Shown here: in pieces, positions 14,264 through 64,000 of the stretch
How the letters are laid out: each line of letters starts with the position of its first letter
How positions within the stretch are numbered: position 1 is the first letter of the stretch
Source of the DNA: Octopus sinensis
Taxonomy: Eukaryota
Length of the DNA stretch: 64,000 bases
Assembly: GCF_006345805.1 (NCBI RefSeq)
Contig: NC_042999.1
Span: 139,066,001 to 139,130,000, forward strand
Direction of reading: 5' to 3'
Position numbers and translations under genes: made by a program
The notes under the pieces: generated by a model
Databases searched by the model: none
The model's input: only the letters and a program-made list of their open reading frames with translations
What the model was told of the DNA's origin: nothing

Positions 14264-14264
<1 letters not shown>

Positions 14265-14349
<85 letters not shown>

Positions 14350-38799: not shown

Positions 38800-38956
38800 A
38801 GGAGTAGCTGTGTGATAAGTAGCTTGCTTACCAACCACATGGTTCCGGGTTCAGTCCCACTGCGTGGCACCTTGGGCAAGTGTCTTCTACTATAGCCTCG
38901 GGCCAACCAAAGCCTTGTGAGTGGATTTGGTAGACGGAAACTGAAAGAAGCCCGTC

Positions 38957-38989
<33 letters not shown>

Positions 38990-39209
38990 TATATGTATGT
39001 GTATATACTTGTGTGTCTGTGTTTGTCCCCCCAAACAACCGATGCTGGTGTGTTTACGTCCCCGTAACTTAGCGGTTCGGCAAAAACAGACCGATAGACT
39101 AAGTACTAGGCTTACAAAAAATAAGTCCTGGAGTCGATTTGCTCGACTAAAGGCGGTGCTTCAGCATGGCCGCAGTCAAATGACTGAAACAAGTAAAAGA
39201 TTAAAAGAT
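38800..39209 (+). mobile_element. SINE family A, near full length
   Basis: Same structure as 37654-38058. Confidence 0.88.
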
Positions 39210-42031: not shown

Positions 42032-42235
42032 TTTTACTCTTTTACTAGTTTCAGTCATTTGACTGTGACCATGCTGGAGCACCGCCTTTAGTCAAGCAAA
42101 TCGACACCAGGACTTATTCCTTTTAAGCCTAGTACTTATTCTATCGTTTTTTTTTTGCCGAACCGCTAGATGACGGACACGTAAACACACCAGCATCGGT
42201 TGTCAAGCGATGTTGGGGGGACAAACACAGACAAA

Positions 42236-42302
<67 letters not shown>

Positions 42303-42470
42303 CACACACACACACACATATACGACGGGCTTCTTTCAGATTCCGTCTACCAAATCCACTCACAAGGCCTTGATCGGCCCGAGACACTTGCCCAAGGAGC
42401 CACGCAGTGGGACTAAACCCGGAACCATGTGGTTCGTAAGCAAGCTACTTACCACACAGCCACTCATACG
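42031..42470 (-). mobile_element. SINE family A
   Basis: Reverse complement of the family A head, body and tail, with internal (CA)n. Confidence 0.85.
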
Positions 42471-42474
42471 CCTT

Positions 42475-42508
42475 TACACACACACACACACACACAACAC
42501 ACACACAC

Positions 42509-42584
<76 letters not shown>

Positions 42585-42960
42585 TATATATATACACACA
42601 CACACACACCTCCATATACATACATACACACATACATACATACACACATACATACATACATACATACACACATACATACGTACGTACATATATACATACA
42701 TACACACATACATATATACATGCATACATACATACATGCATACATGTATACATACATACATACATACATACATACATACATACATAAATACACACACACA
42801 CATGTGTGAGAGAGAGAAGAGAGAAAAAGAGTGAGATAGATAGATGAGACATGTACATGTATATGTGTGTGTATGTATTCATGTGTGTATGGTTGTGTAC
42901 ACATACACGTATACATGCTGGCATACACATATATTTACACACGCACACACATGCACACAC
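42475..42960. repeat. Compound CA/TA/TACA microsatellite field
   Basis: Directly visible. Confidence 0.95.
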
Positions 42961-45199: not shown

Positions 45200-45790
45200 T
45201 CTTTGATGAGCCTAGATTTGCTGTATTTTCTGACAGTGGTTGAGTATGGGTCTGGAAACTCTGTAATCAAGAATTTGACATAAAAAAAATTGCTGCCAAC
45301 AATGAAACAAGGCAGTTATTCTGTGATGGTCTGGGGAGCAATTTGGAGCAATAGCCAATCAGAACTGGTGGAGTGTGATGGAAACATAAACTCAGATAAA
45401 TGTGTGTCCATATTGCAGAAAGGACTCCTTCCAATCTTCTTCAGTGGTGAAATGATTAAGAAGATGCTTTATTTATGTCAGACGGCTAAAAAGACCCAAG
45501 ATTTGTTGGAAAAGTATGGCATTTAAAAAAACTTCCATGGCCAAGCCAGTCACCAGATATGAACCCTATTGAACACCTCTGGGGCATGATGGACAGGGCA
45601 CTTCATAAAAAGAATAAAAAAGCATGCTCAAAGCCAGATCTTTTGAGATTACTGTATGAAACTTGGCAAGAAATTCCCCAAGAGAACATTCCTGATCTGA
45701 TCAGTAGCATGCCTTACAGGACCCTTGTATTGAAAAATGCAAGGGGTATGTCTACTAAATATTAGATATTCACATTAAAATAATTAATAA
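45200..45790 (+). mobile_element. Tc1-like (DD34E) transposase fragment
   Basis: FSDSG, SVMVWGAI, WPSQSPDMNPIEHLW, LISSMPYR and the C-terminal GMSTKY*. Confidence 0.85.
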
Positions 45791-45849: not shown

Positions 45850-45934
45850 ATGAAGTGGTGTCTCTGTCAATCTAATTGTATCAATCTGATCTTATTGGTA
45901 ATTGCTGCTTTAACTTTACCTGGATATGCTGAAT
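45850..45934 (+). CDS. SRCR-MAM protein, coding exon 1 (signal peptide)
   Basis: Acceptor ttcacAG at 45841. ATG at 45850 gives MKWCLCQSNCINLILLVIAALTLPGYAE. Donor GTAAGT at 45935, phase 1, compatible with the next exon. Confidence 0.7.
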
Positions 45935-46259
45935 GTAAGTAAACGTAGATCTAAACTATCTCATTCTAAACAGAAAGAAAGCATGTTTGTTTATAATTGT
46001 AACAAGTCAGTGATGGACCTTGGCATGTTGTGAAAATGTCCGCATTCAGCCACATGGCATTATAGAAGAGAATAGATGTTATTTAGTGCATAATTAACCA
46101 ATGGATTTTTGAATTAGTCATTAACATATATTGTCATAGTATTATTTATATATATTGAGTAATTGCTTGCGAAACTCACTACACTTAGTGACTACACACA
46201 CACACATATATATATATTGTTGCCTAAATGACACAACAATGAAAATAACATTGACATCT

Positions 46260-46526
46260 CATTTTAAGAGATATATTTACCAAAATTGCAAAAAAATATC
46301 TTGAAATACTAAAGAGTAAATTTATTCAATAAAATCACCATTGGCTTCAACCATGGCCTCCTGGTGATTTCGGAATTTCCTGCAACTCTTCTGGATGATC
46401 TCCTTGTTTAAGTTGGTTCATGCTGCCATAATCCTTGTCTTCAATTCATCTTTGGTGTTACAAGGTATTTTGTTGGTCTCTTGCTCAACTGCACCCCACA
46501 CATAATAACCAAGAGGGCTGCACTCT
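46260..46526 (-). mobile_element. Fragment of the same maT-like element as 21924-22760
   Basis: Reverse complement matches ~22460-22680. Confidence 0.7.
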
Positions 46527-46960
46527 ATTAACAGTTCAACAGCACTTTTCTCAAGGTAAAACAATAGTTTTTCTGTGAGTGACAGCAGTTACATTTGCCA
46601 GATGCCTTCGCTAAGCAGAATAATGTACTTGCCACTTGACCCTTCTAACCTCTTCTAGGCCACCAAAAGCTAGAATAGAGAAAGCAAATCTATTGTTCTC
46701 AACAATATGTCTATCCTTCTAGCTGGTTTTGCATTATTGTAAATACTAGAATTTGGTAAGGCAAAATTAGTTAGTGAATAAAGACCAACTAGAGTAATGG
46801 CCACAAGCAGGCAGCCACTAAAGACAAACGGCCAGAGGAAGAATAAGGTTATAATCAGCCAACTATGAGACACAACGTCCTTCGACTCTATAACTTTCAC
46901 TAACTCAATTTCTTTTCTCTTACATCATTCTATCACTATTGATAGTTTACTACAATGAGA
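46527..46960 (+). mobile_element. LTR-like dispersed repeat, copy 3
   Basis: Aligns with 15950-16364 in the opposite orientation. Confidence 0.5.
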
Positions 46961-47195
46961 ATGTGTACACACGTACCGGCCGAAATTAACCCTTTTAATC
47001 TTGCATGCTTTTCTATTTACTAATTATACATACCAAGCTGTCGTGGTTTTGGATATATACAAAGTAACGGTAAATAAATATTTCTTTCTAACTTCAATCA
47101 TTGTTCCTCTTCCATCTTACAAATGGCAAACAACGAATACCATTGCCGTTACACACCCAAGTATGTGTTTTGCTTATTCTACTCTTCTTTTGAAG

Positions 47196-47325
47196 ATGAT
47201 GGAGACATTACTTCGGAATCTTCCGGTTTAGTTAAAGTGTTTCACAATGGTAAATGGGGATCCATTTGCGAAGGAAACACTTCTCATGTGGAGGCGAAAG
47301 TGATATGTCGGAGCTTAGGCCGCAA
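47196..47325 (+). CDS. SRCR-MAM protein, exon 2 (SRCR first half)
   Basis: Pyrimidine tract and AG at 47195. Encodes DGDITSESSGLVKVFHNGKWGSICEG...EAKVICRSLG. Donor GTAAGT at 47326, phase 2. Confidence 0.88.
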
Positions 47326-47689
47326 GTAAGTAAAACAATTTTTTTTTTAAGCAGAATATGTAAAATAGGTGCGTTTATCTAGTACTGAAAGTATGACAAT
47401 TGGTGTGTTTTTATCATTCTGTAAAAGATATGGCTAAATAGTTCTAATTACAATTTATAAATTTGATCCCACAGTGTGGAAACTTTGGAAATTTCTTCTA
47501 CCTTCATCAGATTGCAGACGATGGCTTATCTGGCCAAAACTTTGAAGTTACTGTCAACAATATCCTTGTTAAAGAATAAATTTGCACTCTACTGAAGTAT
47601 AGAGTAACTCCTCAGATTATTTTTATTAAATAATAAAAATAACTCCTCAGATTATTTATTATAACTGTACATAAAAACAAACATTAACA

Positions 47690-49050
47690 TACAGACAGGG
47701 TGGGGCAGAAAGAACAAACGCTTTTGAAATGGCTGTTACTCAGCCCCAGGAGGAGGGACATTTGTCTGACTGATACAATTCGGTCCCTGGCATCTTAGCA
47801 TCGTTCTTTTGTTCAGATGGCACTGTGGACTACACCGCTTCGCATGTTTACCTTCAACAGTTATGTGAAGAATAATGAGTCATAGCAGTTCAGCGAGTTT
47901 CGGCACCATTTCCAACAGTCACCGAAATCAAGCTGTTTCCACTCATAACACAATCTTACGTTGGGTGAATGCACTTCATATACAAGGTACGCTAATGAAT
48001 AGGAGATTGGCGGGGGCGCCACGAATGGTATGGTCCCCGGAAAATGTGGAATGTTTCAGACATTCCAGGTGCAGAGTCTGGAGAAAAGTCTTCAGAAAAG
48101 TATGGAGGAGGCTAAATTTATGATACGGAGTCTGAATCGCTCTGCTCGGAGGCATTCCATTGAATTTGGCATCGGTAGTCGATCGGTAAGATGTATTTTG
48201 CATGACAACCTCCATTTCCACTCGTACAACAGTTGAAACCATGGGACTATGCACAGTGGTTTAATTTTGCATGTCAGATAGAAGCGATTTTTGAGGCATA
48301 TGACAACCTCATTTTGTTAATGAGTGATGAAGCTCATTTTCATCTCAATGGCATGGTGAATCAACAGAACTTTCGTTATTGGGCTCTTGAAATCCGAGAG
48401 AACTGCATGAAAGGCCACTGCACAGCCCGAAAGTGACAGTCTGGTGTGCTGTGGGAGAGGCTGCTGTCATTGGGCCTTAATTTTTTTAAAGATAATAATG
48501 GAAATGCTGTTACTGAACTCTGAGCGTTACATAGAGATGATAAACAACTTCTTTGTACTTGAATAACGAAGAAAACGCATGCCTATTCAATGTGTGTGGT
48601 TTCAGCAGGATGGGCCCACACAGCTAGAGTATCAAGGAACATTCTTCGCTCTCTCTTCGGGACCGCCTCATTGCCAGGTTTGCTGACATTCCTTGGCCCC
48701 CTCAGTCCCCTGATTTGTCCATGTGTGATTATTTCTTGTGGGTAAACCTCAAGGCACGTGTATATACGCATAAGGCCCGTACATTGGACGATTTGAATGA
48801 AGCTATTCACATGGAAGTTATTCAAATCGACAGAGCAGTGCAGGAGAGAGTGGAGGCCAGCTTCCAAGAACGCCTTCAGAAATGCATCAATGAAAATGGA
48901 CACCACATGATGGATGTTGTTTTCCACACTTAATTTTGATAAATGCTAATTCAATACGAACACATTAATGTCAATAAAATTTGTTTGCAGCTAAAAGTAA
49001 TGATTTTGCGAGTTTTTCAAAAACATCCGTCCTCACTGCTCCACTCTGTA
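47690..49050 (+). mobile_element. Degenerate Tc1/mariner (rosa/DD41D-like) element in intron 2
   Basis: TACAG...CTGTA ends. Encodes MSDEAHFHLNGMVNQQNFRYW, WFQQDG, WPPQSPDLSMCDYFLW and FQERLQKCINENGHH. Confidence 0.82.
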
Positions 49051-49399
49051 TATATATACATTTATACGTATGTATATGTATATATATGTGTGTGTGTGCA
49101 TGTATATACAAAAATTAAGTTCTATTGCAATTAATAAAGAAACCTGGGGCATTGCAAAAAATTCTGAGTGTGTGAGATAAAGTTCAATACCTGTATGAAA
49201 CAAGACAAATTATGATTACATGGCTCAGTCATCAGTGATATCTGTAATCAAATTCATACTAACTTCAAAATTTTCTCATTTAAACCTTAGAATCTTTGCA
49301 AATTTCTGAAATATTTGTTTATGAAAACAGTATATATTTAGTATATGGTGTCTTGGTTGAATGTTGGTGATACAAAGTTGGGAAAATTTCAGAAAAAAT

Positions 49400-50100
49400 G
49401 AAAGGTAGTATTAGTCGCATAAAAGTGAGCTTACAGCTGTAACAGCAGGTTGGTCATTAGTGTATAGGAAAGAGAGAACGGAGGACAAAAAAGAACTCTG
49501 GGTATAGCAGAGTTGATAATGTGTTGGGTAGAAAGAGCTGTGATTACGTCATCTGATGAAAAGTTACTGATCCCAAAGATGAATCCATATATGGCAGTTT
49601 TGATAGGATTAAGAGTGAAGCACATATGCAGCTAAAGTTAGCATAAAATTGGTGAAGCTTCTCACTCTCAATCAGTCAGCTTGAAATATCATAGGGTCTG
49701 GGGGTAAAGGCATGGTATAGCATGTGGCAATATGTTGGGTTGTTGCGATCAGTTAGTGGTTGGATGACCTGATAGGTGCAGAAAGAGTCTGGAGAAAAGT
49801 CTGCAGAAAAGTTCGGAGGAGGCTAAATTTAGAATTGGGGTGTCTATCATGGATGTGTGATTAAGGATTACAACTTCAGTACTGGTAATATCAGTGTATG
49901 ATGAGTGTAAGAGTCACAAGGGGATGTTGGAATTGAAATCATTGAAGATGGTATTTATGGTAAGGGATATTATCAATGCAGGAGGATATATGAGCAAAAT
50001 GATGCTGGTGTTCAAGGACTTTTGAGAGTGGCAGAAAGAGCAGGTGTATTTGAAAGAGTGGAATAAGGAAGCTTTGAACCAAAGTAATAGGAAATTATTA
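49400..50100 (-). mobile_element. Decayed LINE APE-endonuclease relic
   Basis: Minus-strand traces such as IFNDFN; no ORF. Confidence 0.3.
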
Positions 50101-50211
50101 TTTTAATATCCAGCTAAGAGAGGAGAGTGACAGGGAGAAGAGAATCTTCATATGCACAGACACAGCTTTACATTCCTTGAGAAATACTGTATTGTCATAT
50201 TTACCTTTCAG

Positions 50212-50375
50212 ATATTTATCTCATGGAGGAATATCTTCATCTTTACCTGCCTACATGAGTTCAGTGACATGCAGGGGGGATGAAATGTCACTTGTAGATT
50301 GCTATAATGCCACTTTGTCAAGTTACTCATATTGCTCTTCATCCCCAAAGCTTTATGTCAGATGCAAGGAAAATC
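50212..50375 (+). CDS. SRCR-MAM protein, exon 3 (SRCR second half)
   Basis: Acceptor cctttcAG. Encodes YLSHGG...MSSVTCRGDEMSLVDC...YC...LYVRC. Donor GTGAGT at 50376, phase 1. Confidence 0.9.
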
Positions 50376-51849
50376 GTGAGTATAAATGTTTATATTTAAT
50401 TGCAATATCAAAGTGTATTATCATTCAAATAAACTTTTATCATATTTTGAAAATTACAAGAATTTGTGTATCAATGTCTTATCTCTAGTTCCTTCAGGGA
50501 TAATGGGATTAGTGACTGTTAACCCAACAAAACAGTCAACATCTATGCTACTGCTGATGTTCATGCTTACAAAAGCGAGTTAGACATACTTGCATTTGCT
50601 ACTTTTAAAAAATTAATTTGACATTGTCAGAGGAGAAGGGAGGTGCCCATGACCTTTAGTGACTGATTGGACTAAAAGGATCAATATTCACCCTGAATAG
50701 ATCAATATTTGCAAGAAACATATAGGTGAAGAAGAAAGTGGGAGTCTGATTCCAATGCTTGTGATAGGATGAATTTGGTTAGAGAACTATACACAACAGA
50801 TGATGTGTATGGGTGGTGTGTTAGACTGACCACCTATACCAATAAATAAAAAGTAATGGCAGCAATAATGAGAGAGTGTTAGATATATAATATTAAAAAC
50901 ACTATATAATTGGCATTAAAACTAAAAGTAAAATCCTACACAATTTCACTATGTCTCCAAGTGTATTGATATAGTGAAGAAGGACATAAAAATAAAAAAA
51001 CCTAATAACTTATATTTGTTGTCTATATATATATATGATGATGATGGTATGGAATGGAGTTGGTAAGATCTGGGCTACATATGTTTCATAGTGGGTGGAA
51101 CCTCAGAAGTGGTAAAAATCCAAGCAAGGTGTATACTTCCAGCTACTCTTTAGGCCAAGGATATATTGGCTGAATTAAAGGTTACATTGTTGCAAAGATG
51201 TACATGCTGATGCATGGAAGATTCAGTCAGAATGTGTAGTGAGCACAGTATGAGAAGAGTATAAAAATAAATATTAGAAATAGTATTAGAAGAAGGTGGG
51301 TAAAAAACGAAAATATAAGGGAGTAAGAGGAAGGAGGAATTTAAGCAAGAAGAGATTTGGAGATGTAGATTGGTTTGTTGGAGTAGGGTGAGTGAAAGGT
51401 TTTCTTGTTATGTGTGAGGGAAACACACAGGTTGGAGGCTAGCAGATAGCAATAATACAGTGAGAGAGGGTGGATGGGTGGAACACAGGTCGGGGACTAT
51501 CAGAGAGCCATGATACAGTGGCACAGGGCCAAGAGGACAGGATTGAGGAGTGGAAGGTAAGCATAGTGCATGAAGTGGAAATGTGAGGAAGAGAAGAGAT
51601 GTAGAGATGTAGTTTGGTTTGTTGTGGTAGTGCATTAAATGTTTTCTTGTTAAGTGTGGATTGGACATGCGATGCTTTTAGAACTCAGTTTCGTTGACGT
51701 GGGCAGGTTTTCTCCAGAACTTCATATTCCCAGATATCTCAGTCCATTGTCATTTCCTCTGTGAGGGCCAACATCTTAAGATAAGTCTTTACCACTTCAT
51801 ACCATGTCTTCCAGGATCTCCCTCTTCCGATATATACATATACGATAGA

Positions 51850-52095
51850 CTTCTTTCAATTCTGTGTGTGTTTGTGTGTGTGTGTGTGTGTATGTGCGTG
51901 TTTTTGTGTCCCACCACCACTTGACAACTGAGGTTGGTTTATTCATATCCCTATAACTCAGTGGTCTGACAAAAAGGCTTGATAGAATGAGCAGCAGGCT
52001 TAAAATAATAAGTACAAGGGTCAATTCCTTTGGTTAAAACCCTTCAAGGTGGTGCCCCAGAATGGACACAGTCCAACGAATGAAACATGTAAAAA
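51850..52095 (+). mobile_element. SINE family A 3' part, CpG-decayed
   Basis: ACTTGACAACTGA...GATAGAAT...GGTGCCCCAGAATGGACACAG. Confidence 0.7.
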
Positions 52096-52283
52096 ATATA
52101 GATAGTATCAGTACATGCTAGATTTTAGTACCAGTGCTATACTGGGGTTAAGTTAATAGGCTATACCTCTCATAAGAATAAATTGACCATTGACTAGACT
52201 AATGAAAACAATAAATATTTCCATACATTTCTTCATAAAAATGAGCTTATATTGTGTTACTTTTAATTTGTCTAACTTTTCAG

Positions 52284-52427
52284 CAACTGAGACATATTGC
52301 TCATTTGATAACGATATGTGTGGGATGGTTAGTGAAGGCACATTATATAAATGGAAACGTATTTATCCCAAGAAACATTCAAGACTGCCAGGATCTGAAA
52401 AGGATCACACAACCAAAAGTAGTAAAG
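52284..52427 (+). CDS. SRCR-MAM protein, exon 4 (MAM1 N-terminal part)
   Basis: Acceptor cttttcAG. Encodes TYCSFDNDMCG...KWKR...KDHTT. Donor GTAATT at 52428, phase 1. Confidence 0.9.
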
Positions 52428-53724
52428 GTAATTAGCCCTAGTTTCTATATTATTCAATTTTATAAAGTCTCCTACAACAATCATGGATTAGTGATATCTA
52501 TATTTCAAACAATTTTCTTATTTTAATGTCTTTTTGGACTCAACATTTCACTCAGTATTTTCAGCCACCATCTTCAGGTGATATTCTTGAATTAGGGATC
52601 TATTTGAAAATTGAACGTTTATTTTGCTATCTGATTATATTCTTCTAAACATGTATCTATTATTCTGAAGTACAATAGTGTAAAGGTTAAAGCAGTTGTA
52701 TGTAGTATGAGTATTGTTAGGGATGGCAGCAAACTGTTAATGTACATAAAATGAAAATAGATATTAGAAATGTAAGCAATATAGTAATGTTTGGTAAGGG
52801 TCAGTATGTTTCCAAGGAACAGGACAGATTCCTTGGAGGAAATAGATGCATGCTCTGAGATGCATGTCTTGAAAGAGATGGAAAAGGTATTATCATAACT
52901 GGGTACATTGATGAATTTGAACGAACAGATGTGTTTTTCCACTTGATATGCTAATGCTATGATTACTGTTGGTGTTGCTGTTGTTTAACCCCAAATCAAG
53001 CCTGAATAGGCAGAACATTTCAACCAGGATTATCATCTCTTTATCAATATCTAGAGCTGCACTGTCCAATGTGCACATCCTTTTTTAATATGGTAGAGTG
53101 TGATTTGAAGGATATTTGGCTACTAATTCTAGCCACTTGAGTAGTAACCTCATAAATGGAACTTCTTGTTGGAGTATGGATGTGTGTTGTGATGAAGCTG
53201 CTGCAATGGTAAAAGGAAGACTTTAGAGGAGTTTTGTCAAATATATGCAATCTAGAACTGAATGCAAATCAGGCTGCAAACACAGAAACATTTCCCACTA
53301 CTACACTGGTTATGGATGTATTATGATTGAGGAGCAGTGAATAAGAATATTCTACAAGGAACCAGGGTGATCAGCAATAATTTGAGTTGAGAAAGAATTT
53401 TCAGATTGTGTGATCCAGTAAGGTATCCTTTGTTCTATGGGTGTTGATTTTGTTGGAAGCTGAACTTTTTTGATATATATAAAATGTGTTTGCAGAAAAT
53501 GGAAGGAACCCCTGTACATATGTATGACATTGTGTACTTTAAGTGAATTACAATTTTTATCCTATGTTTTACATCAAGTGTTACTTACTCTGCCTCTGAA
53601 GAGAAGGAAAGAGTAAACAACTGAGCTATCAAGCACATGGATGTGAAAAACAAAAGGAAAGAAAGTTAATGTGGTATATGAGTGATATAGTAGTATTACA
53701 TTAAACATTTAATATATCTAAGAC

Positions 53725-54030
53725 GGCACTTGTGCCGGTGGCATGTGAACAAAACATTCGAGTGAGGTTGTTGCTAGTGCCGCTGGACTGACTCCTGTGC
53801 AGGTGGAACATAAAAAACACCATCGCCACCAGACTGGTCCTTGTGCAGGTGGCACGTAAAAGCATCCACTACACTCTCGGAGTGGTTGGCATTAGGAAGG
53901 ACATCCAGCTGTAGAAACTCTGTGATATCAGATTAGAGTCTGGTGCAGCCATCTGATTTGCCAGTCCTCAGTCAAATCGTCCAACTCATGCTAGCATGGA
54001 AAGTTGACGTTAAATGATGATGATGATGTT
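53725..54030 (+). mobile_element. Repeat family C (LINE/SINE 3' end with (GAT)n tail)
   Basis: GGAGTGGTTGGxxTTAGGAAGGxCATCCAGCTGTAGAAAC core. Other copies: 55845-56170(-), 56585-56920(+), 57640-57980(-), 58190-58370(+), 58425-58685(+), 59375-59545(+), 62700-63000(-). Confidence 0.8.
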
Positions 54031-54104
54031 ATGTTACTCTGTTTTTTTGTTTTAAATAGATTCAGCTTGTTTAGTCCTTGAATGTTCTATATTTACTTTT
54101 GCAG

Positions 54105-54339
54105 GGAAATATATGTTTGCTTCTTCTGTTGGTTTTCCTGGACAAAGAGCATATCTGAAGAAAGTCTTTAACAACTATATCGGGAGTATTAGTTTCTATT
54201 ATCACATGTTTGGAAAAGACATGGGAAGCCTAAATATTTATATTCAAACTAATTCCAGCAAAACTGAAATTGCATCTATATCAGACAATCAAGGTGATGG
54301 ATGGAAATATCTATGTCTACCTGTAGCAGTGAAATATGG
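54105..54339 (+). CDS. SRCR-MAM protein, exon 5 (MAM1 core)
   Basis: Acceptor ttttgcAG. Encodes GKYMF...RAYL...FYYHMFGKDMGSLNIY...NQGDGWK. Donor GTAAGA at 54340, phase 2. Confidence 0.93.
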
Positions 54340-57300
54340 GTAAGAAGAATAGTTTGGTTTTAATATCTCTTAATGGTTCATTGTTGATTTTCAAGCAATG
54401 TTTATGCCAAAATTTTGGCAGATTATCTTATTTGGGAGACCAACAGAAGATATGTAATCATGATACAACATTTTATGTCTGTCCTTATATCTAACAACAG
54501 CTAAAAAATTCACCTCCCACCTTCTGAGTTATAAAGAAATGGTAGTTCATTCTGACTACTCATGTAGCAATGATTTGACAGTTTATCTCTGACCTTCCCT
54601 GTAATAATAATTTAGCAGTTCACTTCTAATTTATCATGTCTCTAAATGACCAACTATTGATTTGTCACTGATATTGGTACCAAAACACAAATCTGTGATG
54701 GAGGTGTATGATCATCTTTGCTAACTTAGTAAATTCATAGCCTTTATCAGCATTGGGAGAATAAAATACATAGTTGACTCCAGGGACATTTGAACTCATA
54801 ACAGGTCAAAATTAAAAACTGTGAGATTTAAAAACTGAAACTAGTCAAATAATTATTTTTGATACAACTACAGGTTCACAGATCTGAAATTAGGTAACAG
54901 CTGAATTATAAAGCCCCCTAGCAGTAGATGGACATTTATTTTATTGACTCTAGAAGAATGAAAGGGAAAGCCAGCTTCACCGTGATTGAAATAATTCAGA
55001 ACGTAAGGGACATATGTATAACTGCAAGTTTAATCCCTTACTCTTCTGTTTCTACCATTAACTCTTTCATGAAATTAACTATGAAATAGAAATTAAATGA
55101 AATACAAAAAAAAAACATTAAAAAAATTATCTTATATCAGTGTAGCTAGACATTTTATAGATGAAATGGTAACTAATGTGCACAAGACGACACCTATAGA
55201 ATACAAGACAAAAACAGAACTTAACAGAAATAATCTTCTGAGTTAACAACAACCCACCCTCAATAGTAGTAGTATGGAGGCATGCACTGTAACAGTGCAT
55301 TGCTGCATCCTCCATTTGTTGGTAATTCCCTATTCCTGACAGATTACTCCTTTGCACATTCAGGTAGCAGCCCTCCAACCTACAGGTCTGTTTGGATAGT
55401 TATTGCTGGTGAGGATTTTATGAGGTCAGAGTGCAAACCCTACCTCAACCTCTTTTAGTTGCCTTTTATGACACAGAGAGGCCCCACACAGCACTAAAGC
55501 AATGAGAGATGAAGTGTTCAGCTCAAGAATATATTTGACTGCTTGATCCCGGAATTGAATCCATGATCTATTAATTGTGGATGCAACACCCTAACCACTA
55601 GGCCACACACCTTGACAAGCTCTATAGATTGGAAATGAAAGAATTGCAAGTCACTTATAGCAATTAAAGCAAATATTTGGCTATAAAAATTAAACAGGGT
55701 TAAAGAAACCAACTGTATTACAAAACGTTTTTGTAACACTTTAGTGTTTCTCCTGATACAAGACATATTTGGAGTCAGTTAGGTCTAAATTATCTCAGAG
55801 CATGCTGTGGATTGACACACATCATTCTCAAACATCATCATCATTTAGTGTTTGCATTCCATGCTGGCATGAGTTAGATGGTTTGACTGAAGTTAGTAAG
55901 TTGGAGAGCTGCACCAGGTTCCAATCTGATTTGGCATGGTTTCAACAGCTGGATGCCCTTCCTAATGCCAACCTCTCCAAGAGTGAATGGGTGATTTTTA
56001 TGTGCTACCAGCACAGGTACCTGTTATGTGACTCTGGCATTGGCTACAACCACAGTTCCACTTAGATTGAGGGGTAATCTCAAGCATGACATATCACCAA
56101 AAATCTTGGTCACCTGTCATTGCCTCCATGAGTTCAGTGTTTGAAGATCATGCTTCCCCACCTCATCCTATATCTTCTTGGGTTAAAACTTAAACTATAT
56201 AGAAGTAAAATATGCTGAGAATTGCACAAAAATAACCTTCCACAATTGTAAACCATCAAGTAACTACATGCTGAACACAAAACTATCAGTAGTTATAACT
56301 ACACACTTATTCATGTTGGTTAACTCCAGATGAGTCCTGATTGATCATTTTTCAGGAGCAGTGCATCAAATATCACAAAGGGATCCTATGGAAGAGGCAG
56401 ACCAAGGAAGACATATAAACTTGATACTTTTACAAATTACTGTCAGAAATATAGTTTTAGTTTTAGATATTTAAAAAAAAATTTTACTATGAGGAAAAAT
56501 AATGAAAAATTTTTGTTACAAATTAATTTTAGCTATTAAGAATGTAGTCTTCAATAGTTATATAAATTACTTTGAATCTTGGATCTCACGGAGGCAATGA
56601 CAAGTGATCAAGACCTTTGACAATTTGCTGTGCTTGAGGAGACTCATCAAGCCAAGTGAAATTGTAGTCATGGCCAGTGCTGGTGACATGTAAAAGGCAC
56701 CCATGCCAGTGACACATGAGAGGCACCTGCTTCACTCTTGGAGTGGTTGGCATTAGGAAGGGCATCCAGCTGTAGAAACCAAGCTAAATTAGACTGAAAC
56801 CTGGTACAGCTCTTTGGCTTACCAGTTCCAGTCAAACCACCAGACACATGCCAGTATGGAAAACAGATGCTAAATTATGGTGATTATGGTGATGCTGATG
56901 ATGATGACAATGATGATGATGATAGGATGTGATATTTTAAAGAACATTTGGTTGCTGTTTTAAGCAAGTCATATAAATGATTCTTCATTAATTTGCTAGC
57001 CATTCAGTTAGTCAAGTAACTGTTCAAAAAACAGTTTGTCATTATGTCTATACTAAAAATAACCTCTTAATTATTAGTTTCCTGAAAATGAAATTTGACT
57101 CTGATATTGTTTTAAATATTTTAATCGTTTTCAGAAATTATATTTTGCTGCTTATAGAAAAAGGTCTAAATATTTAATTCTAGATACATTTAAAAATTAC
57201 TTTTTGTTATCAAAAATATAAACTTGATACTTTTACAAATTAGTTTGTACTGTCAGAAATATAGTTTTAGTTTTAGGCATTTAAAAAAAAATGTTACTAT

Positions 57301-58870
57301 GAGGAAAAATAATTAAAAATTTTTGTTACAAATTAATTTTGGCTATTAGGAATGTAGTCTTCAATAGTTATATAAATTACTTTTTGCTATTAGAAACATA
57401 GCCTTGTATAAATATACATTTATCTGTTCATTTATTTGTTTGTTTGTGTATTTATTTATTTATTTATTTATTCATTTTTTTATTTAAAGAGTGTAGATAT
57501 CTTAATTGAACTGATGGAAAAAAAATGAAAAGTTATGACTCATATCCTCTCTGTCAATGTGTTGTGCAACTGCTGTATTTGCTCCACATGATTGTACACA
57601 TACACACACACACACACACACGCAAACACACACAGATACATTCATCATCATCATCATCATTTAACATCTGTTGTCCATGCTGGTATGGGTTGGACAGTTT
57701 GACTAGAGGTGGCAAGCTGCGGGAGCTGCACCAGACTCCAGTCTGATCTGACATGGTTCCTACAGCTGGATGCCCTTCCTAATACCATCCACGTTACAGA
57801 GTGTGCTGGTGCTTTTATGTGGCACTGCATGGTTGATTTTATGTGGCACTTCCACAAATGGTGTTTACCACCAGAGGGACCAGTCTTAACACTTCTGCTG
57901 TGGAGTACAGGTCTTCTTGAGTATGGCAAGGCACAAGACATTTCAGTCCTTTGTCATCTTGCCTGAAAGGTTCAGTGACCTTATGTATTCATATCATTGA
58001 TGTGGCTCCTAATATTCTTATTTCTGTTCTTATTACAACATTTATTACTATTAATGATAGAGGAATCATGTAGCTCTTCTACAACAAGAACCTGCTTTGC
58101 TCCAATCCTTTCTCTCATACCTTAACCCTTACCTAGTATAAAGACATGACTGCCTCCTCCACCCCACCTCCTCAAATTTTGTAGACTTGCAAATTGCATG
58201 GCAGCCTCACTAGTGATGGTAGCATGAAAAAAACACCTGGTATAAAGTTGTTGGTGTTAGTAAGGGCATCCAACTGTAGAAACCATGCCCTAGCAGACAC
58301 TAGCTAGATCCTATTAAACCTTCCTACCCATGCTAGCGTGGAACATGGCTGTTAAATGATGATGATGATATATAATTCGACTAAATAGATAGTAACAATA
58401 CAAAAGAATTGATGTTATTAATATAATGTGTCGGTGGCACGTAAAATACACCAATCCGACTGTGGCCGTTGCCAGCCTCGCCTGGCACCTGTGCAGGTGG
58501 CACGTAAAAAGCACCCACTACACTCACGGAGTGGTTGGTGTTAGGAAGGGCATCCAGCTGTAGAAACATTGCCAGATAAGACTGGAGCCTGGTGCAGCCT
58601 TCTGGCTTCCCAGATCCCCGGTCAAACCGTCCAACCCATGCTAGCATGGAGAACGGACGTTAAACGATGATGATGATGATGATATATATCTTAGTTCATA
58701 TAAATTAAGAGACTCTCTACTTCATTTTCTTTCAAAGGTAGATAATATATGAAACAATTCTAGGACATATTTCTTGGGTATATTTCTTTCAAAATAAAGC
58801 ATTGGACCTTTTTAATTTATGTAACAAAACATCTAATTTTATGAAGACTATAGCCTTTTGAACTTCAATT

Positions 58871-59274
58871 CTCTTTTTCTCTTTTTACTTGTTTCAGTCA
58901 TATGACTGTGGCCATGCTGGAGCACCGCCTTTAGTCGAGCAAATCGACCCCGGGACTTATTCTTTGTAAGCCCAGTACTTATTCTATCGGTCTCTTTTGC
59001 CGAACCGCTAAGTGACGGGGACGTAAACACACCAGCATCGGTTGTCAAGCAATGCTAGGGGAACAAACACAGACACACAAACACATACACTTATATATAT
59101 ATACATATATACGACAGGCTTCTTTCAGTTTCCGTCTACCAAATCCACTCACAAGGCTTTGGTCGGCCCGAGGCTATAGCAGAAGACACTTGCCCAAGAT
59201 GCCATGCAGTGGGACTGAACCCAGAACCATGTGGTTGGTAGGCAAGCTACTTACCACACAGCCACTCCTGCGCC
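58871..59274 (-). mobile_element. SINE family A, near full length
   Basis: Reverse complement of the family A consensus. Confidence 0.88.
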
Positions 59275-59861
59275 TATGAGCATATAATAGAATAAAAGGA
59301 ATTCTTTTCTCAACTGAGAGGTCTTGTTGTGCAAGTTTCTTGAGGATGTTACTGCTTCCAATGCCATGTAAAAACATCTAGTACACTCTGTAAAGCGGCT
59401 GACATTTTGAAGGGCATCCAGTCATGAAAACCATACCAAAGCAGACAGTTGAGCTTGACATAGTCTTCTAACTTGCTAGTGCCTGTCAATCTGTCCAACC
59501 CATACCAGTTTGGAAGGAGGATGCTAAATGATGATGATGATCATATTGTTCAAAATAAAGCTAACATGTTTGCAATCATAAGTTCACTTTATTAATAAGA
59601 TATGATAATGATACCATAAGCCAATGTTGACTTAAAAATCTAGGACTCTTGAAAAATGTATGATATTAGTGGAATTCTTATCTACTGTAGTTATGACCAT
59701 AGTAACATGTGTGTGATGCTAGCTGGGATTTGAGTGCATTTAAAAACATACAAGAAGCAGAAATACAATAAAGTTAAATATTTTCTTTGGCATTAAGATC
59801 GCTTTCATCACTTACTTTGATGAAATTTTTCCTTTTAGTTTTTTAAATTTTTTATTTAAAG

Positions 59862-59956
59862 GTATCAAGAAATCGTATTTGAAGCATTCCATGGAAATGG
59901 TACTGAAAGTGGTATTGCTCTTGATGACATGACTATATCAACAGAGAACTGTTCAC
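59862..59956 (+). CDS. SRCR-MAM protein, exon 6 (MAM1 C-terminal part)
   Basis: Encodes YQEIVFEAFHGNGTESGIALDDMTISTENCS. AG at 59861, donor GTGAGG at 59957, phase 1. Confidence 0.92.
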
Positions 59957-60001
59957 GTGAGGGAACAACTATATTATTACATATTATCATATTATCACGA
60001 A

Positions 60002-60233
60002 AGGCGGTGAGCTGGCAGAAACGTTAGCACGCCAGGCGAAATGCGTAGCCGTATTTCGTCTGCTCTTACGTTCTGAGTTCAAATTCCGTCGAGGTTGACT
60101 TTGCCTTTCATCCTTTCGGGGTCGATAAATTAAGTACCAGTTACGCACTGGGATTGATGTAATCGACTTAATCCGTTTTTCTGTCCTTGTTTGTCCCCTC
60201 TGTATTTAGCCCCTTGTGGGTAGTAAAGAAATA
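60002..60233 (+). mobile_element. Young SINE family B monomer with 17-bp flanking direct repeat
   Basis: TATTACATATTATCATA at 59975-59991 and 60234-60250; most CpGs retained. Confidence 0.85.
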
Positions 60234-60262
60234 TATTACATATTATCATATACTCTTATATG

Positions 60263-60460
60263 TAAGGTGATGAGCTGGCAAAATTGTTAGCATGCTGGGT
60301 AAAAAGCTTAGCACTATTTTATCTGTCTTTATGTTCTGGGTTCAAACTCTGTTGAGGTTAACTTTACTTTTCATCCTTTCATGTTGAGCATTGGGATTGA
60401 TGTAATTGATTTACCTACTCCCCTGAAATTGCTGACTTTGTACTAAAATTTGAAACCATT
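60263..60460 (+). mobile_element. Old SINE family B copy, CpG-decayed
   Basis: AAGGTGATGAGCTGGC...TTGTTAGCATGCTGGG versus AAGGCGGxGAGCTGGC...ACGTTAGCACGCCxGG. Confidence 0.8.
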
Positions 60461-61213
60461 ATAAACTAGTATGAAATATTATTTTGTTGTAAATAATTAA
60501 CTTTATCAACTGTGTGTATGAATAAACATCTCTGTATACGTGAACACATGTATATGTGTGAATGTGTGTGTGTGTGTGTGTGTGTGTGCATATGTTAATA
60601 CATGTACCCATTTTTTCCATTCTGATTAGATTTATATTTCTGATTTCAACATGTGGCCTACACAGAAACAATAAAAAGAATGATGAAATGAAAGGAAAGC
60701 TTTAAAAATATTTTTCATCTCCTTCAGTATATGCTGTCATCTTTTAAGATTTAAATATTTTAGTGACATACATTGTACCCTATACTCTGGTTCATGATGT
60801 TTCAGAATTATGAAGTTTCTCTGCTTTCCTTTCAACCTAAAGTTCAGCTATGATTTGTTCCAGGATGATCATTATAAAGTTGCTGGTTCAATACCAGACA
60901 CAATTATATCATAGAGTACGCTGTATGAGTAAAAGAAGGAGCTTCTATGTTGTTGCTCATCATGTTAGAAACAGCAACTAAATCATCCTCAAATCATACC
61001 CTACTGTATTAGGAAAGAATAGAAAACATTAGATAATGTATACTGATATATAACTAAAAGACAGGCTGGTTAAGGTGGAAAGCCTTTGACCATACAATAA
61101 TGACATGCAGCTAATCAAAAACAACACAATAAAGTACAATTAATATATGAATGTTGCACTTTGTACTTTATGTATCACAATCTGAAAAGGACTAGGAAAT
61201 TTGGAGTTGTTAA

Positions 61214-61434
61214 CCCTTTCATTACTATATTTATTTTGAGATGCTCTGTGTTTCTTTCAATTACTTTAAATATAACAAAGAATTTAGTAAAATAACTTAG
61301 TTATCATTCAGCTAGTGTTAGGAGCATAAATTGTGACTAAGGTTTGATGGAAGATTTCAATTCAAAACTTATGCAAACAGGATATTTGTACTACAGAACC
61401 AGAGGTGGTTTCAGCAGGGTTGGTAACAAAAGGG
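61214..61434. mobile_element. piggyBac-type MITE
   Basis: TTAA-CCCTTT...AAAGGG-TTAA, with the TSD at 61210-61213 and 61435-61438. Confidence 0.8.
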
Positions 61435-62150
61435 TTAATGTAAGAACAGGGATTATTTGCTTGAATAAACAAATGTAGTCACTATGTATTACAAGCAAAT
61501 ACACCAAACATTCCAACAACCAGTATTTTGCTCTGATTGTTGTTTGAATTAGAAATATAGTGTTTCTTGATTAGCACTCTCGTTTTGATGTTTTAATACA
61601 CATTCTGAAATAAAGAAAAAGATAGATACATTCATGTAGTGTTTCCACTATGACTTTGTGCATGTGTGTGTGTGTGTGTGTGTGTGTAGACAAACCTACA
61701 GCCAACAAATATCCATCCCTAAATAAATGTGAATAGATTAAATTTGGTTATTAGCAGCAAAAATATTAAAAGAAAAAGTTCCTTCAAGATAAATAATCAA
61801 ATGCCTGTATTCTGAAATAATTAAACTTGAAAAATATTGAGAGTGTAATCATCTGATGCCAGCTGTGATGGACAGATCCTTTAGTATAGTTTAATGACAG
61901 ATGACCATCAAAAATGACAATTTATTCACAGTTCAGCTTTGGTAGAAGAGCCAAGACACTGGGACAACTTCAAATTATACAGTACAGATACCTTATAGAT
62001 ACAAACAAGTATAAAACTGGATTTCTTTATATCCTTTGGAAATTTCAAGTGGGTTTAGTAGTTTGAGTTTGCTTGCAAATCTCAAATCATGAAGAGTAGT
62101 CAGAAATAACTGAATTAATTTATTAAATCAAATTTTTGCATTAATTTCAG

Positions 62151-62270
62151 AATGGAATGTTAGCTGTAATTTTAATGAAAACACTTGCAATTATGATATT
62201 GAAAATAATGATATAAATGGTGGCTGGAGAATTGAGAAGATATCTGGTCTGGAAGATCGTTCTAATTATG
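62151..62270 (+). CDS. SRCR-MAM protein, exon 7 (MAM2 N-terminal part); gene continues beyond the window
   Basis: Acceptor aatttcAG. Encodes WNVSCNFNENTCNY...GWRI...LEDRS. Donor GTAATT at 62271, phase 1. Confidence 0.85.
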
Positions 62271-63498
62271 GTAATTATTCATGTTCTTGATATTTTTATT
62301 TCAAGTAGAAATAATAAAATGTTAATCAATAGACACAATCATATCATACAAAACCATATTACTCTAAGTAAAGTACGTGGATGGCCGTAACTTTTGGAAG
62401 AAAAGCTTGTAAAAATGACTGATGTGAAAGTTGAAGATTTGCAGCATTATAGGATAAATTGCTAGCTAAAGAATTATGTTTAAAAATTATAAGAACAACA
62501 TTTATAGACTTGATCACTGTGGTAAATCCAACTAAAGCATCAAATCACTAAGCTAAATTTTAAAATTCTTTCTGTGATTCATTGCTGTTGTTAATGTATC
62601 GGCGCACTTGTTGTCGTCATTCTCCACCTCCTCCTCCTGCTCCTCCCCCTCCTGTTCCTCCTGCCTCTTCTCCTTCTCCTGCTCCTGCTCCTCCTCCTCA
62701 TCATTATCATCTGGAAGGTATGACAGGATACAATGGGTCCAAGGACTGCAATGTACACTACTTGTCTACATTGGTATGGTTTCTACAGCTGGATGCCCTT
62801 CCTAATGTCAACCACTTTGCAATGTGTACTGGGTACCTTTTTCATATCTCCAGTATTAGTGAAGTTGCCATGCAGTTTGCAAGACTATGAACCACAAGAG
62901 AGGATACTTTTGTGCTTGGAGGTGATGGGTTAAAGTATGAGAGAAGGAGCCAGAGCAGAACAAGGCCCTTTCTGTTGAGGGGTTACATGGCTACTCAAAT
63001 TTATGAAGAGAAGGTGCCAGTGATTGGATTGGAACTTGGAAGAAATAAAAATAGTGGAGATGAGGTGTCTTAAGTGAGTAGAAGTGAATGAGGATGGAAG
63101 AACTAGGAGTGTGGCTGAGTAGAAGTTGCAAAAGTGTATGGGAAAATGAGAGATGAGGAATGGGTGAGGTGGTGAATATAATGAATGAAGAACAAATGCT
63201 GAATGGGGGGATAAGTAGGGAAAGTAAGGAAGAGTAGGGGACAACTGTAGAGATTGGATTTAGGAGTAGAGAATGGTGGTTACAGAGCATGGAGGTGATC
63301 AATGATGCATGAAGGTAAAGAGTAGCAGAATAATGGTAATGATAGAGTAGACAGGGGTAAGATGAGGGGGCAGGAGAGAAAGAGAGTAAGAGATATATAA
63401 TAGTGGAGAAGGTGAGATAATTTGGTGGCACAGGGAAAGGTGAATGTAAAATGTGGGTGGCTAGTGAGAAAGATTTGTGGTATCAAGGAAAAGCTGCA

Positions 63499-63499
<1 letters not shown>

Positions 63500-63544
<45 letters not shown>

Positions 63545-63551
63545 TATATGC

Positions 63552-63585
<34 letters not shown>

Positions 63586-63592
63586 ATATATA

Positions 63593-63651
<59 letters not shown>

Positions 63652-63680
63652 ATGTATGTATATATATATATATATACACA
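63500..63680. repeat. (TA)n/(TG)n microsatellite
   Basis: Directly visible. Confidence 0.95.
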
Positions 63681-64000
63681 CAATTTTAATATTTTATAAG
63701 TCTTTGGTGTAATAATATTTTCCTTATGTAAATATCATTGTTTATGTAATGATCTAATTATTGTAATTTTCTATATTATTAGATATTAAATTTAAGTTTA
63801 TTCGTAAGATATTACTTAGCGATAGATTTGTTGTTTGATAGCAAGTATACGAGGTGTCTAAAGTTAGGCTTTTGTATATACATGTATTAATAGTATTAAT
63901 TGTAGTTTTAAATTTCTTACAATTAAAATTAGATAAACTTTGATAAACTTAGATATGTTTCGACTAAAGATTGGTCCAGGCCATGTCTAACTTAATAGCA

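What the first reader, a model, noticed from the sequence alone, without database searches (positions are those of the whole stretch)
45850..62270. Hidden seven-exon gene encoding a secreted or receptor protein: signal peptide - SRCR - MAM - MAM...
Seen: seven GT-AG exons (85, 130, 164, 144, 235, 95 and 120 nt) splice with phases 1,2,1,1,2,1,1 into 324 uninterrupted codons. The ORF track misses three of them. Established: a 6-Cys SRCR split over two exons is the group A pattern, and SRCR and MAM are extracellular recognition/adhesion modules. Inference: an N-terminal SRCR directly followed by tandem MAMs is not the layout of the MAM proteins I know (meprin, neuropilin, RPTP-mu, MALRD1, enteropeptidase). 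It may be a lineage-specific pattern-recognition, symbiosis or chemosensory surface protein.
Basis: partly seen in the sequence, partly recalled or inferred. Interest (0 to 1): 0.7.

Follow-up and report, generated by a model that had tools for sequence, protein, structure and literature searches.

The report
Start of an annotated octopus protease gene
The seven exons are real and correctly spliced, but they are only the first quarter of an already annotated Octopus sinensis gene for a large secreted serine protease, not a hidden or new kind of receptor.

Summary
Seven GT-AG exons (85, 130, 164, 144, 235, 95, 120 nt) join into 324 open codons. These encode a signal peptide, a 6-Cys SRCR, a full MAM and the start of a second MAM.

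The gene is not hidden. Window 35850-64000 is base-for-base identical to Octopus sinensis chromosome CM016861.1. [quoted passage not shown]

The whole gene has 26 coding exons over 61 kb; exon 8 lies about 1.4 kb past the window end. The full layout is signal peptide, SRCR, five MAMs, LDLa, SRCR-like, two LDLa, an 88-residue segment with no Pfam match, then a trypsin-family protease with an intact catalytic triad. No second hydrophobic segment exists, so it is most likely secreted.

The O. bimaculoides orthologue (94% identical) keeps the same seven exons and is already listed in a published SRCR-gene survey. Two paralogues occur in O. vulgaris skin mucus.

The closest described protein with the same domain set is enteropeptidase, but order, anchor and activation site differ. 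Function is untested. Verdict: already known, low interest.

The parts
45850..45934 (+). Coding exon 1 (85 nt): start codon and signal peptide, MKWCLCQSNCINLILLVIAALTLPGYA|E
   Evidence: AG before and GT after. It holds the only strongly hydrophobic segment of the protein (Kyte-Doolittle 1.95, residues 5-23). Identical to RefSeq XP_029634237.1.
47196..47325 (+). Coding exon 2 (130 nt): N-terminal half of the SRCR domain (Cys 53, 66)
   Evidence: The same exon length is found in O. bimaculoides.
50212..50375 (+). Coding exon 3 (164 nt): C-terminal half of the SRCR domain (Cys 92, 102, 113, 123)
   Evidence: Pfam SRCR spans residues 35-124, E 1.1e-16.
52284..52427 (+). Coding exon 4 (144 nt, phase 1-1): first 48 residues of MAM1, including Cys 132 and 139. 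It is a cassette exon, absent from RefSeq isoform X2 in both O. sinensis and O. bimaculoides.
   Evidence: P0153 and P0013 read KEN|RKYMF, which joins exon 3 directly to exon 5. With exon 4 included, the Pfam MAM match covers profile positions 1-158.
54105..54339 (+). Coding exon 5 (235 nt): core of MAM1
   Evidence: Used as the exact window query that found the orthologue. 99.1% identical to O. bimaculoides.
59862..59956 (+). Coding exon 6 (95 nt): end of MAM1 (GIALDDMTISTENCS)
62151..62270 (+). Coding exon 7 (120 nt): start of MAM2 (CNFNENTCNY...). The gene continues past the window: exon 8 would start at window-equivalent position 65368.
   Evidence: The MAM2 piece, residues 286-442, scores E 7.2e-20 against Pfam MAM.

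Best explanation
The seven exons are the first 7 of 26 coding exons of an annotated Octopus sinensis gene on chromosome CM016861.1 (product XP_029634237.1, 1440 aa; window = about 139,066,001-139,130,000).

Shown: the product has an N-terminal signal-like hydrophobic segment, then SRCR, five MAM domains, LDLa, an SRCR-like domain, two LDLa, an 88-residue segment with no Pfam match, and a C-terminal S1A (trypsin-family) protease domain. The His/Asp/Ser triad is present. There is no other hydrophobic segment. The chain carries 28 N-glycosylation sequons and 67 Cys after the signal. The window encodes only the front of the non-catalytic arm: signal peptide, SRCR, MAM1 and the start of MAM2.

Inferred: the protein is secreted. 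The SRCR-MAM array is a binding or self-association arm that places the protease on its substrates or in an extracellular matrix such as mucus, as the heavy chain of enteropeptidase does for its light chain. Residue 189 is Pro, so cleavage would not be trypsin-like. The new N-terminus would follow Asn (EPN|IRYG), not Arg/Lys, so activation, if it occurs, uses a non-tryptic protease or another route. Exon 4 is an in-frame cassette that removes the first third of MAM1 in one annotated isoform.
For: - Identity: window 35850-64000 equals L001 1-28151 with 0 mismatches in 28,151 bases. The 324-aa model equals P0213[1:324].
- Gene structure: 26 coding exons, every intron GT-AG, reproduce the 1440-aa product exactly.
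- Domains: (MAM x5, LDLa x3, SRCR, one borderline SRCR at 25.7 bits against a 26.1 cut-off, Trypsin 170 bits).
- Catalytic domain: triad and key positions read from alignments to kallikrein-7 and other solved proteases, and from a family alignment.
- Topology: a single hydrophobic segment at residues 5-23, plus the sequon and Cys counts.
- Conservation: the O. bimaculoides orthologue is 94% identical over the 324 residues, with the same exon lengths and splice sites. Exons are more conserved than introns, and whole-CDS dN/dS is 0.40.
- Isoforms: X2 lacks exon 4 in both species.
- Extracellular lead: paralogues A0A6P7S478 and A0A7E6EQG6 are listed in the O. vulgaris skin-mucus proteome (PMC11431876 supplement).
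- Relatives: enteropeptidase matches both the MAM (8h3s, E 3.2e-9) and the protease (7wqx, E 2.6e-31).
Against: - No RNA-seq or peptide evidence for this particular gene was seen here. Its accessions are absent from the mucus proteome supplement and from searchable paper texts.
- Cleavage of the signal peptide was judged by eye, not with a predictor.
- Position 193 is Val where the paralogues and most S1 proteases have Gly. There is no Arg/Lys at the activation site. Catalytic competence is therefore not assured.
- dN/dS over the first 972 nt is 0.82 (19 non-synonymous against 6 synonymous changes). This would fit weak constraint on the N-terminal arm, but the counts are small and do not differ significantly from the rest of the gene (p = 0.17).
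Confidence: 0.9

Rival explanations
1. The protein is a protease homologue that does not cut. The SRCR-MAM-LDLa arm and a catalytically weak protease-like domain act together as a binding or scaffold protein in an extracellular matrix, like other non-catalytic serine-protease homologues.
For: Val replaces the oxyanion-hole Gly193 in this gene and in its O. bimaculoides orthologue only; the paralogues keep Gly. There is no basic residue before the Ile that aligns with the mature N-terminus of kallikrein-7. Constraint is moderate (dN/dS 0.40 for the whole CDS, 0.82 for the first 972 nt).
Against: His, Asp and Ser of the triad and the DSGGP motif are all kept in both species. From my own knowledge, not tested here: human mesotrypsin has Arg at position 193 and is active, so a non-Gly residue there does not by itself abolish catalysis.
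Confidence: 0.2
2. The N-terminal hydrophobic segment is an uncleaved signal anchor. The protein would then be a type II membrane protease like enteropeptidase and the TMPRSS family, displayed on the cell surface.
For: The closest characterised relatives of the C-terminal module (enteropeptidase, TMPRSS2, corin, matriptase) are type II membrane proteases. The N-terminal segment is the only hydrophobic stretch in the protein.
Against: The hydrophobic core is only about 13 residues (INLILLVIAALTL). It follows a 10-residue N-region and is followed by PGYA|E, with small residues at -3 and -1, which is the pattern of a cleavable signal peptide (read from the sequence; no predictor was run). There is no SEA domain and no cytoplasmic tail. 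Two paralogues with the same kind of N-terminus are recovered from secreted skin mucus.
Confidence: 0.08
3. One reading: a non-enzymatic secreted or receptor protein built of SRCR plus tandem MAMs, used for pattern recognition, symbiosis or chemosensation, and a layout new to science.
For: The part inside the window is indeed only signal peptide, SRCR and MAMs. SRCR and MAM are binding modules (established knowledge). Shorter paralogue models with only SRCR and MAM domains exist (P0158, P0159, P0160).
Against: All three annotated isoforms of this gene run on to a trypsin domain. There is no transmembrane or GPI-type C-terminal segment. The gene and its orthologue are already annotated and catalogued. 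No expression data tie it to symbiotic or sensory tissue.
Confidence: 0.04
4. A chance chain of open segments, or a dead pseudogene.
For: None beyond the high TE load of the region.
Against: Pfam E-values are 1e-16 and 2.5e-27. All 26 exons are intact. The orthologue has the same exon structure and no stops. Exons are more conserved than introns.
Confidence: 0.01

Closest known systems
[quoted passage not shown]
   Same: It is this gene. Residues 1-324 are identical to X1. The O. bimaculoides orthologue is 94% identical with the same seven exons.
   Different: Nothing in sequence. The automatic name is misleading, because the protein has SRCR domains and a protease domain that MALRD1 lacks.
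Enteropeptidase (TMPRSS15)
   Same: It uses the same four module types: MAM, LDLa, SRCR and an S1 protease. LDLa and an SRCR-type segment sit just before the protease. Both its MAM and its protease are found by sequence (PDB 8h3s E 3.2e-9; 7wqx E 2.6e-31; turtle enteropeptidase E 5e-35).
   Different: Enteropeptidase has an N-terminal signal anchor, SEA and two CUB domains, and one MAM. The octopus protein has a short signal-peptide-like N-terminus, an extra N-terminal SRCR, five MAMs, and no SEA or CUB. Residue 189 is Pro, and the activation site is EPN|IRYG rather than a basic site. It is not an orthologue.
[quoted passage not shown]
   Same: Tandem MAM domains plus LDLa modules. This similarity is the source of the RefSeq name, and vertebrate MALRD1 proteins are hit at 21-24% identity.
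   Different: The MALRD1 hits carry no SRCR and no trypsin domain in their Pfam lists. The octopus gene has its five MAMs in an uninterrupted row.
Octopod paralogue family (P0154, P0155 = A0A6P7S478, P0156 from Argonauta hians, P0159 = A0A7E6EQG6, and others)
   Same: Where the annotated model is complete, the family shares the signal peptide - SRCR - MAM array start and the C-terminal LDLa - SRCR-like - protease end. Pro at 189 and a non-basic activation site are also shared. P0155 and P0159 are the two skin-mucus proteins.
   Different: Paralogues are about 50% identical in the best local alignment, are longer (up to about 2000 aa) or lack the protease in the annotated model, and keep Gly193. 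The one located, P0159, lies 9 Mb away on the same chromosome.
SRCR-protease and LDLa-protease mosaics: TMPRSS2/hepsin group, corin, matriptase, insect nudel
   Same: LDLa and/or SRCR modules come directly before an S1 protease domain. All are found with the C-terminal 406 residues.
   Different: Different N-terminal modules (frizzled, CUB, SEA), mostly membrane-anchored, and no MAM arrays.

Membership tests
The annotated O. sinensis gene (XP_029634237.1) | Same genomic DNA and same protein sequence | tested here: met
0 mismatches in 28,151 bases against CM016861.1. Model equals the first 324 residues.
SRCR domain, group A | Pfam SRCR match above the curated cut-off | tested here: met
   61.4 bits against a 26.1 cut-off, residues 35-124.
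SRCR domain, group A | Six cysteines and a domain encoded by two exons | tested here: met
   Cys 53, 66, 92, 102, 113 and 123. The domain is split over exons 2 and 3. The group definition itself is established knowledge.
MAM domain | Full-length Pfam MAM match and four conserved Cys | tested here: met
   MAM1 covers profile positions 1-158, 96.1 bits. Cys 132, 139, 245 and 283. MAM2-5 score 37.7-80.5 bits.
S1A (chymotrypsin-fold) serine proteases (whole gene; this domain lies outside the window) | Trypsin-domain match and the His57/Asp102/Ser195 triad | tested here: met
   Pfam Trypsin 170 bits. TAAHC, NNDIGL and DSGGP align with the triad motifs of kallikrein-7 and of the paralogues.
S1A serine proteases, active zymogen type | Activation cleavage after Arg/Lys that frees an Ile/Val N-terminus | tested here: not met
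   The residue before the aligned Ile is Asn (EPN|IRYG). Relatives have Ser, Thr or Ile at that place.
S1A serine proteases, active zymogen type | Gly193 of the oxyanion hole | tested here: not met
   Val in this gene and its O. bimaculoides orthologue; Gly in all paralogues. The consequence for activity is unknown.
Trypsin-like specificity | Asp189 at the base of the S1 pocket | tested here: not met
   Pro at the aligned position in the whole octopod family.
Enteropeptidase / type II transmembrane serine proteases | N-terminal cytoplasmic tail plus signal anchor, and SEA (and CUB) domains in the stem | tested here: not met
   No SEA or CUB match. The N-region is 10 residues and the hydrophobic core is short. 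No signal-peptide predictor was available.
MALRD1 orthologue | MAM/LDLa repeats without SRCR or protease domains | tested here: not met
   This protein has SRCR and trypsin domains. Vertebrate MALRD1 hits are 21-24% identical and lack both.
Expressed, spliced gene | RNA reads across the six junctions | not testable with these tools
Indirect support: three RefSeq isoforms in O. sinensis and two in O. bimaculoides, and conserved splice sites. The Logan fragments found (P0021, P0216) are genomic read-throughs from other octopus species, not transcripts.

The most novel reading that the evidence does not exclude
The gene may belong to a cephalopod-restricted family of large secreted S1 proteases with three distinctive traits: a MAM array (in octopods headed by an extra N-terminal SRCR) as a targeting arm, Pro at position 189, and a conserved non-basic activation site (EP-[N/S/T]|I-[R/K]-Y-G). 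That would point to an activation route unlike the usual tryptic cascade. Members working in skin mucus could be a mucosal defence or mucus-processing system not yet described. This particular member would be a variant with Val193.
Probability: 0.25. Interest if true: 0.35.

Novelty: already known. Interest (0 to 1): 0.12.

Why it matters
It matters little for discovery. The locus is an annotated gene whose orthologue has already been counted in a comparative SRCR study.

It is useful as a check on the scan: a reader without tools rebuilt seven exons and their phases without a single error.

Two small points could interest a cephalopod or protease specialist:
- The RefSeq name hides the fact that this is a mosaic serine protease.
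- The family has an unusual activation site and S1 pocket, and two paralogues are skin-mucus proteins. A role in octopus mucosal biology is a reasonable thing to test.

Tried and rejected
- A word-index protein search with the 324-aa model gave only one weak hit. The length filter excludes the 1245-1440-aa full-length products.
I sent the exact translation of exon 5 instead, and that found the orthologue.
- Looking up isoform X2 by exact sequence found nothing, because only the longest product is indexed. X1 worked.
- I searched for extra SRCR or MAM exons or a tandem copy elsewhere in the window: none.
- I searched paper texts for the gene's accessions: none. The mucus-proteome supplement holds two paralogues but not this gene.
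- The SRCR survey lists the orthologue, but its expression values are not in the held supplements.
- Rfam and tRNA scans of the window were empty.
- A tight tandem gene cluster was considered and rejected. The one paralogue I could place is 9 Mb away, and no other gene was called within 10 kb upstream.
- Faster evolution of the N-terminal arm: dN/dS is 0.82 against about 0.36 for the rest of the gene, but the counts are too small to say (p = 0.17).
- I could not identify the organism behind the Logan transcripts P0224 and P0225 (run ERR4030425). Whether the family exists outside octopods remains open.
Full report

Yes, to the base. On the + strand, seven segments are each preceded by AG and followed by GT: 45850-45934, 47196-47325, 50212-50375, 52284-52427, 54105-54339, 59862-59956 and 62151-62270 (85, 130, 164, 144, 235, 95 and 120 nt). 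Most acceptors sit behind a clear pyrimidine-rich tract, and six of the seven donors read GTAA or GTGAG. Joined, they give 973 nt, or 324 codons with no stop. The intron phases are 1,2,1,1,2,1,1, as stated.

Pfam finds SRCR at residues 35-124 (61.4 bits, E 1.1e-16). It finds a complete MAM at 132-284 (96.1 bits, E 2.5e-27, profile positions 1-158 of 158). Residues 290-324 are the first part of a second MAM. The SRCR has six Cys and is split over exons 2 and 3. A tblastn of the model against the whole window found no other SRCR or MAM coding piece.

The remark that an ORF track misses three exons fits a 60-aa minimum. Exon 1 lies in a 30-aa ORF, exon 6 is only partly inside a 32-aa ORF, and exon 7 has no start-codon ORF in its frame.

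**2. What is it?**

A direct protein search with the 324-aa model found almost nothing, because that tool only considers proteins of similar length. I therefore sent the exact translation of exon 5.

Among about 900 MAM proteins, two stood out by identity. One was a 102-aa genomic fragment at 90% identity. The other was P0013, 1245 aa, whose N-terminus is nearly the same as the model.

P0013 is Octopus bimaculoides LOC106867184 isoform X2. Its cluster mate P0152 (XP_014767469.1, UniProt A0A0L8I3C0, 1293 aa) is isoform X1 and is 94% identical to the model over all 324 residues with no gap.

A search with P0152 then found the O. sinensis proteins. Their cluster holds XP_029634237.1 (P0213, isoform X1, 1440 aa), X2 (P0153, 1392 aa) and X3 (P0214, 1293 aa). 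The model is identical to residues 1-324 of P0213.

The gene lies on O. sinensis chromosome CM016861.1 in assembly GCA_006345805.1. Window 35850-64000 matches that record with 0 mismatches in 28,151 bases. The window therefore corresponds to about 139,066,001-139,130,000 of that chromosome.

**3. The whole gene**

An exact spliced mapping of P0213 onto the locus gives 26 coding exons, with every intron GT-AG, over 61 kb. Exon 8 would begin 1,368 bases past the window end.

Most module boundaries fall in phase-1 introns. Scanning the modules one at a time gives this layout:

| Residues | Module |
|---|---|
| 1-28 | Signal peptide |
| 35-124 | SRCR |
| 132-284 | MAM1 |
| 290-441 | MAM2 |
| 449-604 | MAM3 |
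| 609-751 | MAM4 |
| 757-896 | MAM5 |
| 900-935 | LDLa |
| 945-1018 | SRCR-like stretch just under the cut-off (25.7 against 26.1 bits) |
| 1039-1077 | LDLa |
| 1079-1114 | LDLa |
| 1116-1203 | No Pfam match; starts like an SRCR |
| 1218-1436 | Trypsin domain (170 bits) |

Only residues 5-23 are hydrophobic enough for a membrane segment (Kyte-Doolittle 1.95; the next best is 1.34, inside the protease fold). There are 28 N-x-S/T sequons and 67 Cys after the signal.

The N-terminus reads MKWCLCQSNC-INLILLVIAALTL-PGYA|E. This looks like a cleavable signal peptide. That is my reading of the sequence, since no predictor was available.

**4. The protease domain (outside the window)**

Alignment with solved proteases (best match kallikrein-7, then factor XI, chymotrypsin, enteropeptidase and TMPRSS2) and with the paralogues shows:
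- The His (TAAHC), Asp (NNDIGL) and Ser (DSGGP) of the triad are present.
- The position of Asp189 is Pro in the whole family, so the specificity would not be trypsin-like.
- Position 193 is Val in this gene and its O. bimaculoides orthologue, but Gly in every paralogue.
- The Ile that aligns with the mature N-terminus of kallikrein-7 is preceded by Asn (EPN|IRYG). Relatives have Ser, Thr or Ile there, never Arg or Lys.

How, or whether, the zymogen is activated is therefore open.

**5. Conservation and isoforms**

The O. bimaculoides locus has the same seven exon lengths and GT-AG sites. Exons 1-7 are 92.9-99.1% identical. The alignable parts of introns 1-6 are 84.5-92.3% identical and differ greatly in length.

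dN/dS is 0.40 over the shared coding sequence. It is 0.82 over the first 972 nt (19 non-synonymous and 6 synonymous changes). With such small counts, this difference is not significant (p = 0.17).

Isoform X2 in both species joins exon 3 to exon 5 (KEN|RKYMF). Exon 4 (144 nt, phase 1-1) is therefore an annotated cassette exon. Skipping it removes the first 48 residues of MAM1, including both Cys 132 and Cys 139.

Isoform X3 lacks exons 11 and 12, which encode MAM4. In O. bimaculoides, exon 11 was not found and exon 12 lacks its 5' end. This fits the four-MAM product annotated there.

**6. Relatives and what is known**

The same start (signal peptide - SRCR - MAM) and the same end (LDLa - SRCR-like - protease) occur in several octopod paralogues of about 50% identity. 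These include one from Argonauta hians. The one paralogue I could place lies 9 Mb away on the same chromosome.

Two paralogues, A0A6P7S478 (P0155) and A0A7E6EQG6 (P0159), are listed in the Octopus vulgaris skin-mucus proteome. Both are more abundant in aquarium-kept than in senescent animals (PMC11431876 supplement). This gene's own accessions are not in that supplement.

Two full-length intronless Logan contigs encode 1410-1423-aa proteins that are 37-40% identical over the C-terminal 406 residues (one read here, from run ERR4030425, species unknown to me). They have a similar layout but begin with a MAM, without the N-terminal SRCR.

Beyond these, the C-terminal module finds a nemertean mosaic protease, then corin, nudel, matriptase and enteropeptidase.

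The O. bimaculoides orthologue is entry Obi001 in a published survey of invertebrate SRCR genes. The same paper lists MAM among the five commonest partner domains of SRCR proteins in the Pacific oyster (PMC10855680). I found no functional study of this gene.

**7. How it most likely works**

Shown: this is an intact, conserved gene for a large extracellular-type mosaic protein that ends in an S1 protease domain with a complete triad.

Inferred:
- It is secreted.
- The SRCR-MAM array encoded in the window is the outer end of a non-catalytic arm that binds substrates, matrix or itself, and so positions the protease. This is how the heavy chain of enteropeptidase serves its light chain.
- The mucus location of two paralogues makes an extracellular mucosal role the best guess.

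I put about 0.9 on identity and architecture, and about 0.4 on the mucosal targeting-arm mechanism. The main rival, at about 0.2, is that Val193 and the odd activation site make this member a non-cutting protease homologue.

**8. Comparison and verdict**

Enteropeptidase is the nearest characterised protein by module set (MAM, LDLa, SRCR, S1 protease). This gene fails that family's defining features: there is no signal anchor, SEA or CUB, no Asp189, and no basic activation site. It is not a MALRD1 orthologue either, despite the RefSeq name.

The claims of a hidden gene and a novel receptor layout do not hold.

Novelty: already known (annotated and catalogued, but not functionally studied). Interest is low.

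Noticed in passing
window 52284-52427 (exon 4); L001 37704-37802 and 40206-40547 (exons 11-12): Two annotated in-frame cassettes. Exon 4 is skipped in isoform X2 of both octopus species and removes the first third of MAM1. Exons 11+12 (MAM4) are skipped in O. sinensis isoform X3. In O. bimaculoides, exon 11 was not found and exon 12 lacks its 5' end.
   Followed up: partly
L001 58615-71008 (protease exons 23-26, outside the window): The protease domain has Val at position 193 (paralogues have Gly), Pro at 189, and Asn before the aligned mature N-terminus (EPN|IRYG). The non-basic activation site is shared by the whole family, including the Logan transcripts.
   Followed up: partly
window 3552-5447 (+): LINE-type retrotransposon remnant: an endonuclease/exonuclease/phosphatase domain and a reverse transcriptase, in broken ORFs.
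   Followed up: partly
window 32821-35651 (+): LTR-retrotransposon pol remnant: RNase H, integrase zinc-binding domain and integrase core. No protease or RT part was seen in the long ORFs.
   Followed up: partly
window 40071-40563 (+); 45290-45765 (+); 47875-48930 (+): Three transposase-like ORF remnants. The first has a mariner-type Pfam Transposase_1 match. The second ends only 85 bases upstream of the gene's start codon. The third lies in intron 2. The second and third had no Pfam match as short pieces, and their transposase look is my reading.
   Followed up: partly
window 53844-54049, 55815-56004, 56683-56892, 57600-58000, 58243-58298, 58492-58691, 59359-59544, 62776-62832: A roughly 200-bp interspersed repeat family, 70-84% alike and in both orientations, crowded into introns 4, 5 and 7 of the gene. 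Its copies explain the recurring '...LQLDALPN...' ORFs.
   Followed up: partly
window 29516-29720, 37651-37903, 38800-39031, 42198-42473, 59040-59300: A second short repeat family of about 210-250 bp, 82-88% alike, usually next to a CA/TA microsatellite. No tRNA or Rfam match was found in the window, so its origin is open.
   Followed up: partly
window 6378-6760, 8000-8350, 12000-12350, 14011-14391, 21000-21670, 42370-42960, 63280-63712: Long CA/TA-rich and other simple-sequence tracts, seen as 'YIYIYI', 'HTHTHT' or 'CVCVCV' ORFs. No other host gene was found in the 45 kb upstream of exon 1.
   Followed up: no
L004 (Logan contig ERR4030425_5103, 4677 bp): A full-length intronless transcript contig encodes a 1423-aa relative with MAM/LDLa repeats, SRCR, two LDLa and a protease, but no N-terminal SRCR. 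The source species is unknown to me. It could show whether the N-terminal SRCR is an octopod addition.
   Followed up: partly
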